Assembly: GCA_977030845.1 (NCBI GenBank)
Contig: OZ365114.1
Span: forward strand, 28,644,001-28,708,000
Source of the DNA: Fimbriosthenelais zetlandica
Taxonomy: Eukaryota
DNA length: 64,000 bases
Reading direction: 5' to 3'
The translations under genes and the position numbers were made by a program. Of this stretch, positions 3,656-10,372 are shown piece after piece (within the stretch, counting starts at the first letter, position 1; each line of letters starts with the position of its first letter). The notes beneath the pieces were generated by a model that saw only the letters and a program-made list of their open reading frames with translations, was not told the DNA's origin and did no database searches.

Positions 3656-4595
3656 ACTTCAGAATGGTCAGGGACCATTCTTAAGTTAGCTAGTCAATCG
3701 TCTATTTTGTTATTATGCTCTATTATCACTGGCCTCCCTTCTCTCGACGGGCAGCCCTCGCTTAGCCCCGGTCAAATTCTCAAGGTGGGGAAAATACTGT
3801 AGGACGGTCGCTACAGCTGTTGAGCACACGGAAGCAGGCTGAGTGTCGGCGGAGAAAGCTAGTCTAATATTCTGCTAGTCTAAGAATTTTCTCCCTGCAA
3901 GTGTATAGGCATTCGAATCCCCCACTTGACCACAAGTAGGAGATTTTTTTACTTTCCTAGTTCTAAGGCATTGAGTGAGACCGGTAATAGAGAAACTTCA
4001 CCTTGTGATTCCTTATAGCATTGCAACACAGATATACTAATGTCTTAAGTTAAATTCCCCTCATTCCATCCTTCCCACTTCTATCTATCTATCTATCTGT
4101 CTGTCTTTCTAATCTATCTAATCTAAGTCTTATCTATGTTACCTATTCCATGTAATCTATCTAATCTATTTTACCTATCTTATATATCCTATCAAGTCTA
4201 TCTTACCTAATCTATATAATCCATCTTATCTACCTTAATAATATCTACCTTATACATCTTATACATGTTAATAGGTGTGAACAATTCTTTACGGACATAT
4301 TCAAGCAACATTATTAGCACCCTGACAAGATAGAACACACAAATCTATTATACCAATTATCGAGCAGCCTCAGAAGCATGCACCATGAAATATTAAAAAA
4401 ATGCTAAAAAATATAACCAAATAATTCGCCAACAGAAAATCTTGACCATACCTAATACCGTTGTTGAATATTTGTACTCAAATTCCCAGGTAACACATTA
4501 GTGTCGATGTAATCATACTTTGCGTCTGAATCATTGTTTGGTGATACATGAAGCTATATGTCTTCCTGTGCAGACACGGGGCAACACTCTATCCA

Positions 4596-4846
4596 CTACA
4601 CCGGAGTGATGTACGTACTAGACACATATGATTTTCTAATCTGATCATACAGGTCCTCATACGGGCTTGGTCTTTCTTGAAGGTGTTCATACTGCATGGG
4701 AGACTCATGTGGATCATTAATTTGGTCATAAATGTGTATCTCGCCATTATTTGGGGCTCTTTCTTGAAGGTCTTCATCAGGTGGGGGAGACTCATATGGA
4801 CCTATAACGTCATCATTGTTTGGGGCTCTTACTTCTGGTACCGGTA
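4596..4846 (-). CDS. Ig receptor exon 7: Tyr-rich cytoplasmic tail ending YITPV*
   Basis: TTTCAG acceptor; phase-1 frame gives PVPEVRAPNNDDVIGPYESPPPDEDLQERAPNNGEIHIYDQINDPHESPMQYEHLQERPSPYEDLYDQIRKSYVSSTYITPV*. The ORF track shows a different frame here. Confidence 0.85.
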
Positions 4847-7800
4847 CTGAAATTAAATTAAAATAGGCAAAATCGTGAGGCGAGCCATTAGATTAAATAT
4901 TTAGCCATCATTAGCATGTTAAACATATATAAAACATATCATCATATTTGAAAACGTAAATTAATGACCCATATGGAGAGAAAAGTAATTTTAATTGCAT
5001 GGAGGAATAACAACATATGAAACCAATGACATGGATTTAAGCCAAAGCAACATAAATTTAAACAAAAATTGGAAAATGCCGGTATTATCCTTAACCTTCG
5101 TATCCACTTTCGTTTTCATCTTCCCTTTTGGACTTCCGTTTGAGGAAGGACACAACAACGACCACAATAACGATGATCAAAACAAGCAAACCCAGAGATC
5201 CCCCGACCACGGCTGGCAGTATGGACGACTTCCAAGGATCTATAAAACAATATTATGTCACAATATTATCAGGCAATATCTGGAAATGTAATTATATCAG
5301 ATACTTGAGGATACTTGATGGGGTATATAGCAACAGTTTGTAGAGCAATTCACTGGTCTCTGTTGACAGTTGGTTGTTATGCCTAATATTTTTGAACTAT
5401 AGTCAATCATAATTTACAAGACAAAAATGACTCACCGAAAACCACAAATGTTTTTCTGAGCTCCTGCTCATCGTCAAACTCCGGCGTGATTTGACACAAA
5501 ATGTCCGCATAGTTCATTTCCTTCTTGGCACGTACAGTCTTCTTAATTTTATATTGGTATGTGCCGTCTGAATTTTGTATGGGATCCTCATCCATTTTGC
5601 TTGTTTCTCCGTTGAACATCAACAAGAATTTTGCCTGAGCGAACTTTGGATACACTCGACCGACAGAGCAAGTAATTACAACTTCTGTGTCCACTTGAAC
5701 TGCTAAATCAGGCGTGACTATCAGGTCGAGTTCAGATGTGGCTGGAATGGAGAAAAGTCAGTCGATAGTTTATCTGAACATCAGGTAGCTCAAAATATAT
5801 TTTTTTTAAATGAAAATCAATTCTGTAATTTACCAGTTCTTAAGTATAAAATTTATTTTGCTCAAAATATTTTTTTCGAGCAGGTCCATCATATTTGTTT
5901 TATAATCTCAAACAAAACTTGGGGACAGATTTTAAAATTCAGATGCTTGCAGAGTATATGCTTCCTGCATAAGTCATTGCACAAGGCAGGAATCGATTCT
6001 GTTCTGTTTAGAACCTTGTTATTTAATCATTTTAAATGTTATAAGCATTAAACATACATTAGATGAATGACTCACTGTAGACTATCAGGTTGATGTATTT
6101 AAATGTGTCACTAGCTGACAATAATTTACATGTAAACAGTGAATTATCCTCTATCTGTGATCGTCCTATAGTCAGACTGAAGGTGTCGCCATCCTCGTCA
6201 TCCATGTCCATGTCTTCCCGGGCGGCGGGTCCATGTGCACATACGGCAACACCCCTAATCTGACCAAACAGAGCGCCCTGCTTATTTTTAACAGTATGAT
6301 TAGCAAAGCCGCGATACCACCTTCGAGAAAAGTAATCCACTGTATCACAGTCCAGTGTCACTGGTTGGTGTTCTTTCACAGAGAAGCTTTCATCTGCAAG
6401 AGAGAAATATCAGACATATCAGACATGATGGGGTATCAGTGGCGGGGGGGCCTTGCCCCCTCCCCCTCCCCCCGGAGGAGGAAGGGAGAGAAGGGGAATA
6501 AAACAGAGAACGGAGAAGGGGAGGAAGGAGAGAAGAAAGGAGAGTAAAAGAAAGGAGGAAGGAAAAGAAGGTAACCAGCCTAGACTTGGCAGGCCCACCT
6601 TCGGGGGAGGTGCTTTAATGCCAGCCTTAGCCTTACGCTAGAGTACAGGTGACCATTTTTAAGCCAAACCTTCCCTGCATAATCCAATATGTAGGGGGAA
6701 CAGGCTATGGGTCAGATCAATTCGAGCCTACAAAAGTAAGGGCCCTAGGGATACACGTGTTAACAAAAATTTGCTATACATTACACCTAATAAACTTTAA
6801 GCTTCACAAGAAAATGTTAGTTCTAGCAATATCCATATATAACATATATAGACTGTCCTTCTTGTAAGTAATACAAAATTGTCTCGAAGTGATTTCGTAA
6901 TCAAGAGACCATTTTTACATGATGGCAATGTATGTTCCTACAAAAATGTAAAAAGAGAATTATTTAAAAAAAGGCAGTAATACAGCTTGCTATAACTGGA
7001 AAACTGTGTAAGATAATTGTAGACATGCCAGTTTGCCAGTTCACGGTGTTTTTACTCTGTGCCAGGGTTCTTGTAATATTAACATGCATCATCTTCGTAT
7101 AAGTTTTAGCATGGGACGGCTTACATGGTTGGGTTTAGATTCATGAGTCTAATAGAAAGGAACACGCGTTATTATTTGTGAGAGTCCCTTGCAGGACACT
7201 CGCTCTCTAAATATTAATGCATTGTGTCATAAGACACGACCGTATAGTTCTAATTTCAGGACTTTTGCTATATAATGACAAAATTTAAGGACTTTTCCAG
7301 GGCAACTCTTTTTCCAAGGATTCTCCAGGAGTGTGGAAACCCTGAAGAGTCATGAAGCCCAATGTCACATATTTAGTGGATTAGAATTTAATTCCATTCA
7401 TGTGCCAAAGTTAACAACAAAAAGAGGCAAGTCCGTCAATATATGTTGGTGCCTCAGAAGAAAACAAGTGTCTTAATTGTCTACAATTATCTTGCTTAAT
7501 ATCTGTGTCTCAGTCAAAGCTGCTATTTCATTGTATTGGTGAATTACTTCCTTTCTACATTTTTGGTAGAAACAAATATTGACATCTTATTGACCTCTAA
7601 AAAATTCCTGTGAGGCAACTTTTTATTAGTTCGAGACTCTATATGTAACTTAACTTTTTATTAGTTTAAAGCAGGATTTTATTAGTTTAAAGTAGTCTAC
7701 ATGCATATGGATATTGCTATGCTGCAAGAGTGTGACTTATAATTTATAAGTTATATTATAAGTAGATAAATCTCCACTGAGATTATTGATAGAAACAGAC

Positions 7801-10372
7801 TTTTTTTCCCAAAAATGTACCAAACACTACCTTCTATTTCAAAATGTATCAGACCCCCCTACCCCTAGAAACGCCTCACGTCTCCAGCACTTGTAGATGA
7901 GTGCCTTTCACGCTTCGCGCCTACGGCGCTCTTCTTGCCGTTCACAACATTGTTCATAATTTGGACCCCCCACCTTCAAAATCCTGGATCCGCCCCTGGG
8001 TATTGCAACAGTTTGTAGAGCAATTCACTGGTCTCTGTTGACAGTATGTTGTTATGCCTATAATATTGTTGAACTATAGTCAATCATAATTTACAAGACA
8101 AAAATGACTCACCGAAAACCACAAATGTTTTTCTGAGCTCCTGCTCATCATCAAACTCCGGCGTGATTTGACACAAAATGTCCGCATAGTTCATTTCCTT
8201 CTTGGCACGTACAGTCTTCTTAATTTTATATTGGTATGTGCCGTCCGAATTTTTTATGGGATCCTTATACATTTTGCTTGTTTCTCCGTTGAACATCAAC
8301 AAGAATTTTGTCTGAGCGAACTTTGGATACACTCGATTGACAGAACAAGTAATTACAACTTCTGTGTCCACTTGAACTGCTAAATCAGGCGTGACTCTCA
8401 GGTCGAGTTCAGATGTGGCTGGAATGGAGAAAAGTCAGTCGATAGTTTATCTGAACATCAGGTAGCTCAAAATATATTTTTTTTAAATGAAAATCATTTC
8501 TGTAATTTACCAGTTCTTAAGTATAAAATTTATTTTGCTCAAAATGTTTTTTTCGAGCAGGTCCATCATACTTGTTTTATAATCTCAAACAGAACTTGGG
8601 GACAGATTTTAAAATTCAGATGCTTGCAGAGTATATGCTTCCTGCATAAGTCATAGCACAAGGCAGGAATCGATTCTGTTCTGTTTAGAACCTTGTTATT
8701 TAATCATTTTAAATGTTATAAGATTTAAACATACATTAGGTGAATGACTCACTGTAGACTATCAGGTTGATGTATTTAAATGTGTCACTAGCTGACAATA
8801 ATTTACATGTAAACAGTGAATTATCCTCTATCTGTGATCGTCCTATAGTCAGACTGAAGGTGTCGCCATCCTCGTCATCCATGTCCATGTCTTCCCGGGC
8901 GGCGGGTCCATGTGCACATACGGCAACACCCCTAATCTGACCAAACAGAGCGCCCTGCTCATTTTTAACAGTATGATTAGCAAAGCCGCGATACCACCTT
9001 CGAGAAAAGTAATCCACTGTATCACAGTCCAGTGTCACTGGTTGGTGTTCTTTCACAGAGAAGCTTTCATCTGCAAGAGAGAAATATCAGACATTAGTTT
9101 ATCAGATTAAGAAGATGTGGTAATGGTACTAGTGACCGGACTCTTGAAAACTAAGCCCATAGATTTTGGAAGCAACATTATAGCATACTAAAACGTCCAA
9201 AAGTCAAATTTTAGTTTGCCATTCTAGTGAATTGGGGGTCGGAGTGAGGGATGGATAACCCTGAGGTGGAAGCCATCAGGTGCCCCTCCCATTCACTCGT
9301 GGAACATACCATCATGCACCAATACCACTTCTCAGTCAGTTCTATCTATACATGTAGTATTTCCCTCATACCCCAGTAAGTCTAAGAGGTAACTTTCTTA
9401 AAAAGAAATTAAAAGAATATAATAAATTTTAATCAACATATATATATTATATATATGATGATTCATGTGAATGTCTGGATGTGTACCACACCTCAACTAC
9501 TAAATCATACATCCATATACTGGTTCGCACATGAAATAAAGGCAATTGTTGAATATGTATCACTTGATACATTGAAACTATTAAGTCATTTTCAGTCAAA
9601 GAAATCAATATGACTGGGTTACACTCCATATATTTCACTGAATTCTGAATAACTCAAAAGCAATAAAATATAGCTTACTTTTGGTGGTTTTACCAAATCC
9701 GGCTCCAAAATCTGAAGCGATATGCATGGGCACCCACTTTGTCATACCTACCTTCACTATTTTATGAATCTGTGGCCCAGAAACATGCTTTTTAAATCAG
9801 AAATGAAAGATGTATAATTGGTAAAAAAAATTATATTTCATAAATGAACAATGAATGGGAACTTTTAATGTTCTGAGATTTCCCAGAACATCAAATATAG
9901 CCACAATATATTACCATCTGAGATGGCTATAAACATAACCGTCCATGACGGCAATAACCGTCCATGACGGTAGTTTTAATGAATAGAAAATGGGTTTTCA
10001 TTTAGAATAAATTTTAAGGTAAGAGCAGTACCTGTAAAAGGGGCTTATGAAAGTATGAAAAGACAACTGACATTTCCTGGAATTATTAAACAGATTTATG
10101 TAGGACTGTCACGAACCGTTATGGACTGTTATTTTGAGCTGCTCTATCTTTGTAAATTATTATAGATAAGCTGCCCGGCTATAGATTTGAAAACACATGC
10201 ATATATATATTTAACAGTAAAAAGGGCGATGTTGAAAGAACAAATTTATATTTTACCCATCTCGAGGGTCAAGTGTAACCCAGTCGTGAGAACCATACTC
10301 ACCCGCATCCAAAGAATAGGCAGATGGGATTGACAGGATTTGTAAGAGGAGAATAACCATGAACGTGTCCAT
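4596..10372 (-). CDS. Ig-superfamily type I membrane receptor, SP-V-C1like-V-C1like-TM-ITAM-like tail; 7 exons, 1713 nt, ~570 aa
   Basis: Manually spliced exons 10303-10372, 8753-9070, 8113-8418, 6076-6393, 5436-5741, 5096-5239, 4596-4846. All introns are GT-AG and phase 1, the joined frame is open from ATG to TAG, and the domain order is coherent. Confidence 0.9.
5096..5239 (-). CDS. Ig receptor exon 6: transmembrane helix and juxtamembrane segment
   Basis: TTTTATAG acceptor, G|GTTAAG donor, 144 nt. DPWKSS-ILPAVVGGSLGLLVLIIVIVVVVVSFL-KRKSKR-EDENESGYE, i.e. a hydrophobic helix followed by a basic stop-transfer cluster. Not in the ORF track. Confidence 0.9.
5436..5741 (-). CDS. Ig receptor exon 5: C1-like Ig domain (copy A)
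   Basis: ITCSVGRVYP...PIQNSDGTYQY...ILC; GT-AG, phase 1-1, 306 nt. Confidence 0.9.
6076..6393 (-). CDS. Ig receptor exon 4: V-type Ig domain (copy A)
   Basis: Same splice sites as 8753-9070 and differs from it by 1 nt (K/E). Confidence 0.9.
6437..7998. mobile_element. 1562-bp non-autonomous DNA transposon-like insertion
   Basis: Termini CAGTGGCGG / CCGCCCCTG (inverted); GGTAT directly flanks both ends (6432-6436 and 7999-8003); the empty site is visible at 5317-5330. Confidence 0.65.
8113..8418 (-). CDS. Ig receptor exon 3: C1-like Ig domain (copy B)
   Basis: TTCCAG acceptor, G|GTGAG donor, 306 nt. ITCSVNRVYP...PIKNSDGTYQY...ILC with 57 residues between the Cys. Confidence 0.9.
8753..9070 (-). 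CDS. Ig receptor exon 2: V-type Ig domain (copy B)
   Basis: TTGCAG acceptor, A|GTGAG donor, 318 nt. VTLDC...RWY...FSLTI...EDNSLFTC with 72 residues between the canonical Cys. Confidence 0.9.
10303..10372 (-). CDS. Ig receptor exon 1: signal peptide MDTFMVILLLQILSIPSAYSLDA
   Basis: ATG at 10372, hydrophobic core VILLLQILSI, AYS-L cleavage-like motif, donor G|GTGAGT in phase 1 matching the V-exon acceptor. Confidence 0.85.

What the first reader, a model, noticed from the sequence alone, without database searches (positions are those of the whole stretch)
4596..4846. Cytoplasmic tail with ITAM-pattern YEHL-x6-YEDL, further YxxI/P motifs and a PDZ-type C-terminus
Seen: the ~100-aa tail holds YEVP (formed across the exon 6/7 junction), YESP, YDQI, YEHL, YEDL, YDQI, YVSS and YITPV*. 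YEHL-QERPSP-YEDL fits YxxL-x6-YxxL, and T-P-V-COOH fits class I PDZ binding. The tail grew by internal duplication (RAPNN x2). Known: ITAMs recruit Syk/ZAP70-type tandem-SH2 kinases and YxxP motifs bind Crk/Nck-type SH2 domains. Inference: a self-signalling activating receptor.
Basis: partly seen in the sequence, partly recalled or inferred. Interest (0 to 1): 0.7.

Follow-up and report, generated by a model that had tools for sequence, protein, structure and literature searches.

The report
Tyrosine-rich receptor tail with ITAM-like motif
The last two exons of a minus-strand immunoglobulin-type receptor gene encode a real 98-residue cytoplasmic tail with clustered Y-[D/E]-x-[L/I/P] motifs, one pair fitting the ITAM pattern, but the ITAM and PDZ readings are not well conserved in its only two relatives and invertebrate receptors of this kind are already known.

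Summary
Spliced as GYE|G…ag|TA, the minus-strand exons 5239-5093 and 4846-4596 give a transmembrane helix and a 98-aa tail. The tail carries YEVP, YESP, YDQI, YEHL, YEDL, YDQI, YVSS and YITPV-stop. YEHL-x6-YEDL fits the ITAM pattern, seen in 1.1% of composition-matched shuffles. The RAPNN internal duplication is real.

The TM+tail is a portable module of about 0.77 kb (window 5304-4531). The genome holds three copies, all on one chromosome. The other two follow multi-I-set Ig genes, so the V-C1 gene here is probably chimeric.

Across the three copies Y55, Y68 and Y82 never change. The second ITAM tyrosine, Y78, is Lys in the nearest copy. The T-P-V end is lost in one copy and replaced in the other. 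dN/dS is about 0.7.

No orthologue and no sequencing run could be found.

The genome does encode a Shark-type (Syk-family) tandem-SH2 kinase, plus Src-, Csk- and SHP2-like genes. The only ectodomain paralogue carries an ITIM+ITSM tail.

Verdict: a probable phosphotyrosine docking tail. A true ITAM is plausible but unproven (about 0.25-0.3). It is a new member of a known kind; comparable cases are oyster CgIgR, Draper and Hydractinia Alr.

The parts
5093..5239 (-). Exon 6. It encodes the extracellular stub DPWKSS, a 27-residue uncharged TM helix, the basic stop-transfer KRKSKR, and an acidic juxtamembrane stretch ending GYE (Tyr codon 5099-5097).
   Evidence: Translation. The exon is homologous to the TM exons of L002 (85%), L003 (62%) and the C38 paralogue (61.5%).
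4847..5092 (-). Phase-1 intron between the TM exon and the tail exon (donor G|gttaag, acceptor tttcag|TA). If the donor is read through, a TAA stop follows immediately.
   Evidence: Donor and acceptor are kept in all three copies. Identity to L002 is 87% with many indels not divisible by three, whereas the one internal indel in the exons (3 nt, TM exon) is in frame; the 1-nt insertion near the 3' end is listed separately.
4596..4846 (-). Last exon: 83 codons of acidic, Pro-rich tail plus the TAG stop.
   Evidence: No Pfam family matches.
4761..4829 (-). Repeat unit 1 (RAPNN-DDVIGPYESP-PPDEDLQE). It is a degenerate copy: the first Tyr is deleted and YEHL is replaced by DEDL.
   Evidence: This unit is absent from L003.
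4674..4760 (-). Repeat unit 2 (RAPNNGEIHIYDQINDPHESPMQYEHLQE). It carries Y55 and Y68.
4650..4691 (-). ITAM-pattern segment YEHL-QERPSP-YEDL (Y68, Y78). SPYEDL also fits the ITIM pattern.
4638..4649 (-). YDQI (Y82). It is invariant in all three copies and lies 14 residues after Y68.
4596..4607 (-). C-terminal T-P-V followed by the TAG stop (class I PDZ pattern).
   Evidence: Not conserved in L002 or L003.
4531..5304 (-). Segment shared with the L002 locus, which lies about 73 kb further along the + strand (upstream of this minus-strand gene). It covers 65 nt of upstream intron, the TM exon, the intron, the tail exon and 65 nt of 3' flank. This is the transferred TM+tail module.
   Evidence: Its upper edge (5304) lies next to the lower edge (5326) of the duplicated V-C1 block.

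Best explanation
The stretch is the true 3' coding end of a type I IgSF receptor gene (V-C1-V-C1-TM-tail, minus strand). The tail is acidic, Pro-rich and, from its composition, probably disordered. It carries a cluster of Y-[D/E]-x-[L/I/P] sites.

It belongs to a small, lineage-restricted TM+tail module with three copies on one chromosome. The other two copies end multi-I-set Ig genes. The module was probably joined to the V-C1 ectodomain by a copy of about 0.77 kb whose breakpoint lies in the intron before the TM exon; the data do not fix the direction of transfer.

The most likely function is a phosphotyrosine docking scaffold. After receptor clustering a Src-family kinase would phosphorylate the YExL/YDxI sites. 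SH2 proteins would then dock: Src/Csk-type on pY-[E/D]-x-[I/L], Crk/Abl-type on pYxxP, and possibly the tandem-SH2 kinase Shark.

Shown here: the exon structure, the motifs, their non-random context, the modular origin, the conservation pattern, and the presence of the candidate reader kinases in the genome.

Inferred only: phosphorylation, any SH2 binding, and the sign of the signal.

If a tandem-SH2 kinase does read the tail, the invariant pair Y68/Y82 is as good a candidate as the canonical pair Y68/Y78. Y68 and Y82 are 14 residues apart. Draper's Shark-binding pair Y934/Y949 is 15 apart.
For: - Gene model and motifs.
- Non-random Tyr context and ITAM pattern: 1.1% and p about 1e-5.
- The exon frame and splice sites are kept in three copies. 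The internal differences between copies are in frame (a 3-nt indel in the TM exon; the 69-nt repeat unit 1, absent from L003). The intron has many indels not divisible by three.
- Y55, Y68, Y82 and the block QYEHLQ.R are invariant in the three copies.
- The TM helix is uncharged, so there is no sign of pairing with an adaptor chain.
- An SH2-Ank-Ank-SH2-Tyr kinase (Shark architecture) lies at C21:8.574-8.585 Mb.
- Src-, Csk-, SHP2-, PLCgamma-, RasGAP- and Grb2-like SH2 genes are present.
- Module boundaries.
- I-set exons lie upstream of the other two copies.
- Precedents for a receptor-intrinsic ITAM in invertebrates: PMC6994640, PMC9546547, PMC6219719.
Against: - There is no transcript evidence; none was listed.
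- No homologue was found outside this genome.
- dN/dS is about 0.67-0.75 against both paralogues, on few sites, and cannot be told from relaxed constraint.
- Of the four core tyrosines of this tail, three are invariant. Non-Tyr core columns are invariant at about 58%, so the tyrosines are not specially protected.
- Y78 is Lys in L002. The second YESP site is HESP in this gene. The C-terminal 10 residues are dispensable or lost in L002.
- YxxL/I also matches clathrin-adaptor sorting signals.
Confidence: 0.55

Rival explanations
1. The tail holds a bona fide ITAM. Doubly phosphorylated YEHL/YEDL (or YEHL/YDQI) recruits the tandem SH2 domains of Shark or Syk, making this a self-signalling activating receptor. 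It would be the activating partner of the ITIM/ITSM-bearing V-C1 paralogue on contig C38.
For: - The pattern fits and occurs in only 1.1% of shuffles.
- It is kept as YEHL-x6-YDYL in L003.
- A Shark-type kinase is present.
- The TM helix is uncharged.
- The ectodomain paralogue (62% V, 45% C1 identity) ends in VVYAQL...TEYARI.
- Oyster CgIgR and Draper show that the mechanism exists in invertebrates.
Against: - Y78 is Lys in the closest copy, L002.
- There is no acidic residue at -3 of either Tyr.
- As far as I know a 6-residue spacer is the short extreme of the consensus.
- dN/dS is about 0.7.
- No orthologue or expression data were found.
Confidence: 0.27
2. The YxxL/I motifs are mainly tyrosine-based sorting or endocytosis signals (AP-2 mu2 type). 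Together with the C-terminal PDZ ligand they position an adhesion molecule at junctions, as in JAM/CAR or Kirrel-type IgCAMs. Under this reading the module keeps the role it has in the multi-I-set CAM-like genes that also carry it.
For: - YDQI, YEHL, YEDL and YDQI all fit Yxx-hydrophobic.
- The other two copies of the module end multi-I-set Ig genes that look like adhesion molecules.
- The tail ends in T-P-V.
Against: - The PDZ-type end is not conserved.
- The strong preference for D/E at +1 and the YxxP sites are more typical of SH2 and Src-kinase motifs than of AP-2 signals (the comparison rests on general knowledge).
- The two readings do not exclude each other.
Confidence: 0.2
3. The tail has little or no function. 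On this reading the gene is a young chimeric gene, or an unexpressed one, and the motifs are inherited relics that are drifting.
For: - dN/dS of 0.67-0.75 cannot be told from neutral on these few sites.
- The exons are only modestly more conserved than the intron (93% against 87%).
- L002 carries a frameshifting 1-nt insertion.
- This copy has lost one YESP site.
- No expression evidence was listed.
Against: - All seven exons are open and have canonical, phase-compatible splice sites.
- The indels within the coding exons are in frame, apart from the 1-nt insertion near the 3' end of L002, whereas the intron has many that are not.
- The frame and splice sites are kept in L003 at dS of about 0.3.
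Confidence: 0.18

Closest known systems
Crassostrea gigas CgIgR (PMC6994640)
   Same: It is an invertebrate type I IgSF receptor with an ITAM-pattern sequence in its own cytoplasmic tail. The paper reports that it co-precipitates with CgSyk and drives ERK phosphorylation.
   Different: It has five Ig domains rather than V-C1-V-C1. Its motif is DYTEL-x8-YEKL. I found no sequence similarity between the tails: nothing appeared in the exhaustive library search. Binding has been tested for CgIgR and not for this tail.
Drosophila Draper ITAM read by Shark (PMC6219719)
   Same: The tail has many tyrosines. An ITAM is read by a Shark-type tandem-SH2 kinase after Src-family phosphorylation, and the non-ITAM tyrosines also matter. 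This genome encodes the same SH2-Ank-SH2-kinase architecture.
   Different: Draper has an EGF-repeat ectodomain. Its ITAM tyrosines are 15 residues apart (Y934, Y949). Here the canonical pair is 10 apart and the invariant pair Y68/Y82 is 14 apart.
Hydractinia Alr family and Botryllus fester-type receptors (PMC9546547, PMC12582321)
   Same: These are lineage-specific invertebrate IgSF receptor families. Their fast-evolving tails carry ITAM or ITIM patterns, and Syk/Shark and SHP homologues are present in the genome.
   Different: They are large polymorphic allorecognition clusters. Here there are only three tail copies and two V-C1 genes. No polymorphism data are available.
Vertebrate FcgammaRIIA and paired activating/inhibitory IgSF receptors
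   Same: The ITAM lies in the ligand-binding chain itself. A related ectodomain is attached to an ITIM/ITSM tail, as in the C38 paralogue.
   Different: Vertebrate activating partners usually have a charged TM residue and borrow an ITAM adaptor chain. Here the TM helix is uncharged and the whole TM+tail is shared with an unrelated Ig gene family. This comparison rests on general knowledge.
JAM/CAR (CTX family) and Kirrel/Neph tails
   Same: These are IgSF adhesion receptors with Tyr-phosphorylated tails and a C-terminal class I or II PDZ ligand, for example T-H-V in Kirrel (from my own knowledge).
   Different: There is no sequence similarity. The PDZ-type end here is not kept in either paralogue.

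Membership tests
ITAM (canonical immunoreceptor motif) | Two Yxx[L/I] separated by 6-8 residues (some authors allow 6-12) | tested here: met
   YEHL-x6-YEDL. The pairs YDQI-x9-YEHL and YEHL-x10-YDQI also fit the wide form.
ITAM (canonical immunoreceptor motif) | Acidic residue upstream of the first Tyr (D/E-x-x-Y) | tested here: not met
   The residues before Y68 are E-S-P-M-Q and before Y78 are R-P-S-P. The strict pattern does not match.
ITAM (canonical immunoreceptor motif) | Lies in the cytoplasmic part of a membrane receptor or adaptor | tested here: met
   It follows a 27-residue hydrophobic helix and a KRKSKR stop-transfer, downstream of the Ig exons. The topology is predicted from sequence only.
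ITAM (canonical immunoreceptor motif) | Both tyrosines conserved in homologues | tested here: inconclusive
   Both are kept in L003 (YEHL-x6-YDYL). The second Tyr is Lys in L002. No orthologues were found.
ITAM (canonical immunoreceptor motif) | Phosphorylation by a Src-family kinase and binding of the tandem SH2 domains of a Syk-family kinase | not testable with these tools
   Only the presence of Src-like and Shark-like genes was shown.
Class I PDZ-binding C-terminus | [S/T]-x-hydrophobic-COOH at the very end | tested here: met
   The tail ends T-P-V followed by TAG.
Class I PDZ-binding C-terminus | C-terminal motif kept in homologues | tested here: not met
   L002 has a 1-nt insertion that gives TAA after RKS. 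L003 ends D-T-L.
ITIM | [S/I/V/L]-x-Y-x-x-[I/V/L], conserved | tested here: inconclusive
   SPYEDL fits. The Tyr is lost in L002, and in L003 position -2 is Asn. An SHP2-like gene is present.
Tyrosine-based sorting signal (Yxx-hydrophobic, AP-2) | Yxx[LIMFV] in a cytoplasmic tail | tested here: met
   Four sites fit. Function was not tested.

The most novel reading that the evidence does not exclude
A non-vertebrate, possibly lophotrochozoan, animal has a paired-receptor system. Two related V-C1 ectodomains carry opposite tails. One tail is a classical ITIM+ITSM. The other is an ITAM-bearing TM+tail module captured by exon shuffling from an IgCAM-type gene and read by a Shark kinase. The activating partner would then have arisen by module capture and not by pairing with an adaptor chain.
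Probability: 0.15. Interest if true: 0.7.

Novelty: new member of a known kind. Interest (0 to 1): 0.4.

Why it matters
If the tail signals, it adds a case of receptor-intrinsic ITAM-type signalling outside vertebrates. It would also give a concrete example of how an activating receptor can be built: a ready-made TM+tail module from an adhesion-type Ig gene is joined to an ectodomain whose paralogue is inhibitory.

The value is limited for three reasons. Such receptors are already described in oyster, Drosophila, Hydractinia and Botryllus. The family here has only three members. Nothing beyond motifs supports signalling.

Tried and rejected
- **Sequencing runs.** Two searches listed no run and one call found the service busy. 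The exon 6/7 splice and expression therefore remain unverified, and read laying could not be used.
- **Exhaustive HMMER search with the 83-aa tail against 1.84 billion representatives.** The only hit was a repetitive junk ORF, P0001. I rejected it as not homologous.
- **ESM Atlas search with the tail.** The best score was 0.77, which is chance level.
- **JGI metagenome scan with the three-tail profile.** No relative was found.
- **Pfam on the tail.** No family matched.
- **Profile search of the own genome.** It found only the three known copies.
- **Search for relic ITIM/ITSM exons downstream of the tail in the window.** None was found.
- **Search for a canonical Syk (two SH2 domains, no ankyrin repeats).** The tandem-SH2 loci I inspected were Csk-, SHP2-, PLCgamma-, RasGAP- and Grb2-like, plus one Src-like locus. 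Presence or absence of Syk is therefore open.
- **Full-length search with the search for homologous proteins.** I did not run it.
- **Complex prediction of the tail with the Shark SH2 domains.** I did not run it. The SH2 domains are split over exons, so there is no unaltered reference, and binding depends on phosphotyrosine.
- **'Tyrosines under special constraint'.** I considered this and rejected it. They are conserved at about the same rate as other core residues.

Full report
**What is in the sequence**

The gene lies on the minus strand. Exon 6 (window 5239-5093) encodes DPWKSS, a 27-residue uncharged hydrophobic helix, and then KRKSKREDENESGYE. It ends GAA G|gttaag. Exon 7 starts after tttcag with TA CCG.

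Exon 7 (4846-4596) gives 83 codons ending YITPV and then TAG. Counted from KRKSK the tail is 98 aa. It is rich in Glu, Pro, Asp and Ser and has eight Tyr: Y14 YEVP, Y33 YESP, Y55 YDQI, Y68 YEHL, Y78 YEDL, Y82 YDQI, Y89 YVSS and Y94 YITP.

The upstream exons are a V-set-like and a C1-set-like pair, present twice. Pfam gives V-set E = 5e-5. It gives C1-set 23.9 and 22.2 bits against a cut-off of 21. All introns are phase 1. Pfam finds nothing in the tail itself.

**Is it more than chance?**

- YEHL-x6-YEDL (4691-4650) fits Yxx[LI]-x6-8-Yxx[LI]. That pattern appears in 1.1% of 200,000 shuffles of the same 98 residues. The strict form with an upstream D/E-x-x does not match.
- The stronger signal is the context of the tyrosines as a group. 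Six of eight are Y-[DE]-x-[LIVP] (p about 1e-5). Six of eight have D/E at +1 (p = 0.0015). Four of eight have L/I at +3 although the tail has only three Leu and six Ile (p = 0.0016).
- These values are inflated by the internal repeat. I therefore read them as 'clearly non-random context, ITAM pattern suggestive'.
- SPYEDL also fits the ITIM pattern.

**Internal duplication**

The duplication is confirmed. A 59-nt pair lies at 4671-4729 and 4758-4816 (75% identity). A 21-nt pair lies at 4745-4765 and 4814-4834 (90%). This gives units of 29 and 23 codons.

Alignment with the single-unit paralogue shows that unit 1 is the degenerate one. It has lost the first Tyr by an 18-nt deletion and reads DEDL where unit 2 reads YEHL. 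It keeps YESP. In this gene unit 2 reads HESP where both paralogues read YESP.

**A portable TM+tail module**

A six-frame search of the whole assembly finds only three copies of the tail, with a single sequence and with a profile. All three are on contig C21:
- this gene;
- L002, about 73 kb further along the + strand, which is upstream of this minus-strand gene (86% aa identity);
- L003, at 8.53 Mb (61% over the core).

Each copy is preceded by a homologous TM exon with the same donor and acceptor.

DNA similarity between this gene and L002 is confined to window 5304-4531. That is 65 nt of intron, the TM exon, the intron, the tail exon and 65 nt of 3' flank.

Upstream of L002 and L003 lie colinear I-set Ig exons of a multi-Ig, adhesion-molecule-like gene, not V-C1 exons.

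The V-C1 exon pair of this gene is itself a 1.09-kb tandem duplicate: 5326-6417 against 8001-9094, 97.7% identity. Its lower edge (5326) lies about 20 nt from the upper edge of the TM+tail block (5304).

The simplest reading is that the V-C1 gene carries a TM+tail module shared with the I-set gene family. The join lies in the intron before the TM exon. The direction of transfer is not established.

**Conservation**

Across the three tails, Y55, Y68 and Y82 and the block QYEHLQ.R are invariant. The other sites vary:

| Site | This gene | L002 | L003 |
|---|---|---|---|
| Y14 (YEVP) | Tyr | Tyr | His |
| Y78 (second ITAM Tyr) | Tyr (YEDL) | Lys (KEDL) | Tyr (YDYL) |
| C-terminus | T-P-V | TAA after RKS, from a 1-nt insertion | D-T-L |

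The table rests.

The canonical ITAM is therefore kept in the distant copy and broken in the near one. The PDZ-type end is unique to this gene.

dN/dS (Nei-Gojobori):
- Against L002: 0.072/0.096 for the tail and 0.070/0.119 for the TM exon.
- Against L003: 0.24/0.32 overall.

That is about 0.7, on few sites. Nucleotide identity to L002 is 93% in the exons and 87% in the intron.

Of the four core tyrosines of this tail, three are invariant. About 58% of the other core columns are invariant, so the tyrosines show no special protection.

What does argue for coding constraint is the indel pattern. Differences within the coding exons are in frame: a 3-nt indel in the TM exon, and the 69-nt unit 1, which is absent from L003. 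The intron has many indels not divisible by three. The reading frame and splice sites survive in L003 at dS of about 0.3. The 1-nt insertion near the 3' end of L002 is the one exception.

**Relatives outside the genome, and expression**

Nothing was found:
- The exhaustive HMMER search returned only a junk repeat ORF.
- The Atlas search was at chance level.
- The metagenome scan gave nothing.
- No sequencing run was listed.

Only paralogues were available.

**Is the reading machinery there?**

Yes, in part.
- At C21:8.574-8.585 Mb, about 41 kb from L003, the exons encode SH2, ankyrin repeats, SH2 and a Tyr kinase, by Pfam. This is the Shark architecture, the Syk-family kinase that reads Draper's ITAM in Drosophila.
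- Src-like, Csk-like, SHP2-like, PLCgamma-like, RasGAP-like and Grb2-like SH2 genes were also recognised.
- A canonical Syk was not seen.

Draper's ITAM tyrosines are 15 residues apart (Y934, Y949). The invariant pair Y68/Y82 here is 14 apart, and the canonical pair Y68/Y78 is 10 apart.

**Context that raises the immunoreceptor reading**

The only other gene with this V-C1 ectodomain lies on contig C38. It is 62% identical in the V domain and 45% in the C1 domain. It has a homologous TM exon (61.5%) but unrelated tail exons.

Spliced in phase (donor GATG|gtgagt, acceptor gaaag|TG), those exons read VVYAQL...(26 residues between the two Tyr)...TEYARI. That is a textbook ITIM+ITSM pair. The splice model is inferred, not verified.

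Two related ectodomains with an ITIM/ITSM tail and an ITAM-pattern tail are the layout of paired receptors. This is still motif-level evidence.

**Mechanism and odds**

| Reading | Odds |
|---|---|
| Phosphotyrosine docking tail: Src-type kinase phosphorylates the YExL/YDxI/YxxP sites and SH2 proteins dock | about 0.55 |
| True ITAM feeding Shark/Syk and making the receptor activating | about 0.27 |
| Sorting or junctional role (Yxx-hydrophobic plus PDZ end), which can coexist with the first | about 0.2 |
| Drifting relic in a young chimeric or silent gene | about 0.18 |

**Comparison with what is known**

Receptor-intrinsic ITAM patterns in invertebrate receptors are already described:
- oyster CgIgR, with Syk co-precipitation (PMC6994640);
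- Draper and Shark (PMC6219719);
- the Hydractinia Alr family (PMC9546547);
- Botryllus receptors (PMC12582321).

This is therefore a new member of a known kind. What is particular here is the modular origin of the TM+tail and the ITIM/ITSM-bearing ectodomain paralogue.

I did not test that. I found no paper on ITAM receptors in annelids in the library.

Noticed in passing
G000:C38:9896133-9899643 (loci L008, L011, L014), minus strand: This is the only other V-C1 gene of this type. Its TM exon is homologous to the one here. Two further tail exons, spliced in phase, read ...YSNIETIYAEA... and then VVYAQL...TEYARI...ARV-stop. That is an ITIM+ITSM pair with the two Tyr 26 residues apart, which makes it a candidate inhibitory partner of the window gene. 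The splice model is inferred only.
   Followed up: partly
G000:C21:8574300-8585100 (L032:8347-8601 and L033:1426-9045), plus strand: The exons encode SH2, two ankyrin-repeat exons, SH2 and a Tyr kinase. This is a Shark-type Syk-family kinase. It lies about 41 kb downstream of the L003 TM+tail copy.
   Followed up: partly
window 5326-6417 and 8001-9094: The V exon, its intron and the C1 exon are duplicated in tandem as a 1.09-kb block at 97.7% identity (period about 2.68 kb), in frame. This gives V-C1-V-C1. It is either a very recent exon-pair duplication or an assembly artefact.
   Followed up: partly
G000:C21:28721685-28728642 (L002, L015, L017), minus strand, about 14 kb beyond the window end: The nearest TM+tail copy sits behind multi-I-set Ig exons. 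A 1-nt insertion (TAT to TAAT) creates a TAA stop 10 codons before the ancestral end. The second ITAM Tyr is Lys. The copy may be decaying.
   Followed up: partly
window 5090-5093 and the equivalent sites in L002 and L003: In all three copies the donor of the TM exon reads G|GTTAA or G|GTTAG. Retention of the intron would therefore stop translation at once and give a receptor with a 16-residue tail.
   Followed up: no
window about 10250-10300, minus strand: The proposed first exon (MRVSMVLTTGLHLTLEM, donor ATGG|gtaaaa) is only weakly hydrophobic for a signal peptide. The 5' end of the gene model is uncertain.
   Followed up: no
G000:C1:60170338-60171346, minus strand (L021): A Csk-like kinase locus has two nearly identical complete SH2 exons in tandem, about 0.8 kb apart. 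These are either duplicated or alternative SH2 exons.
   Followed up: no
G000:C10:51081388-51082677 and C13:33572099-33573337, plus strand: Two long intronless open frames (944 and 932 aa) have the Tyr-kinase domain before the SH2 domain. This is the reverse of the usual order.
   Followed up: no
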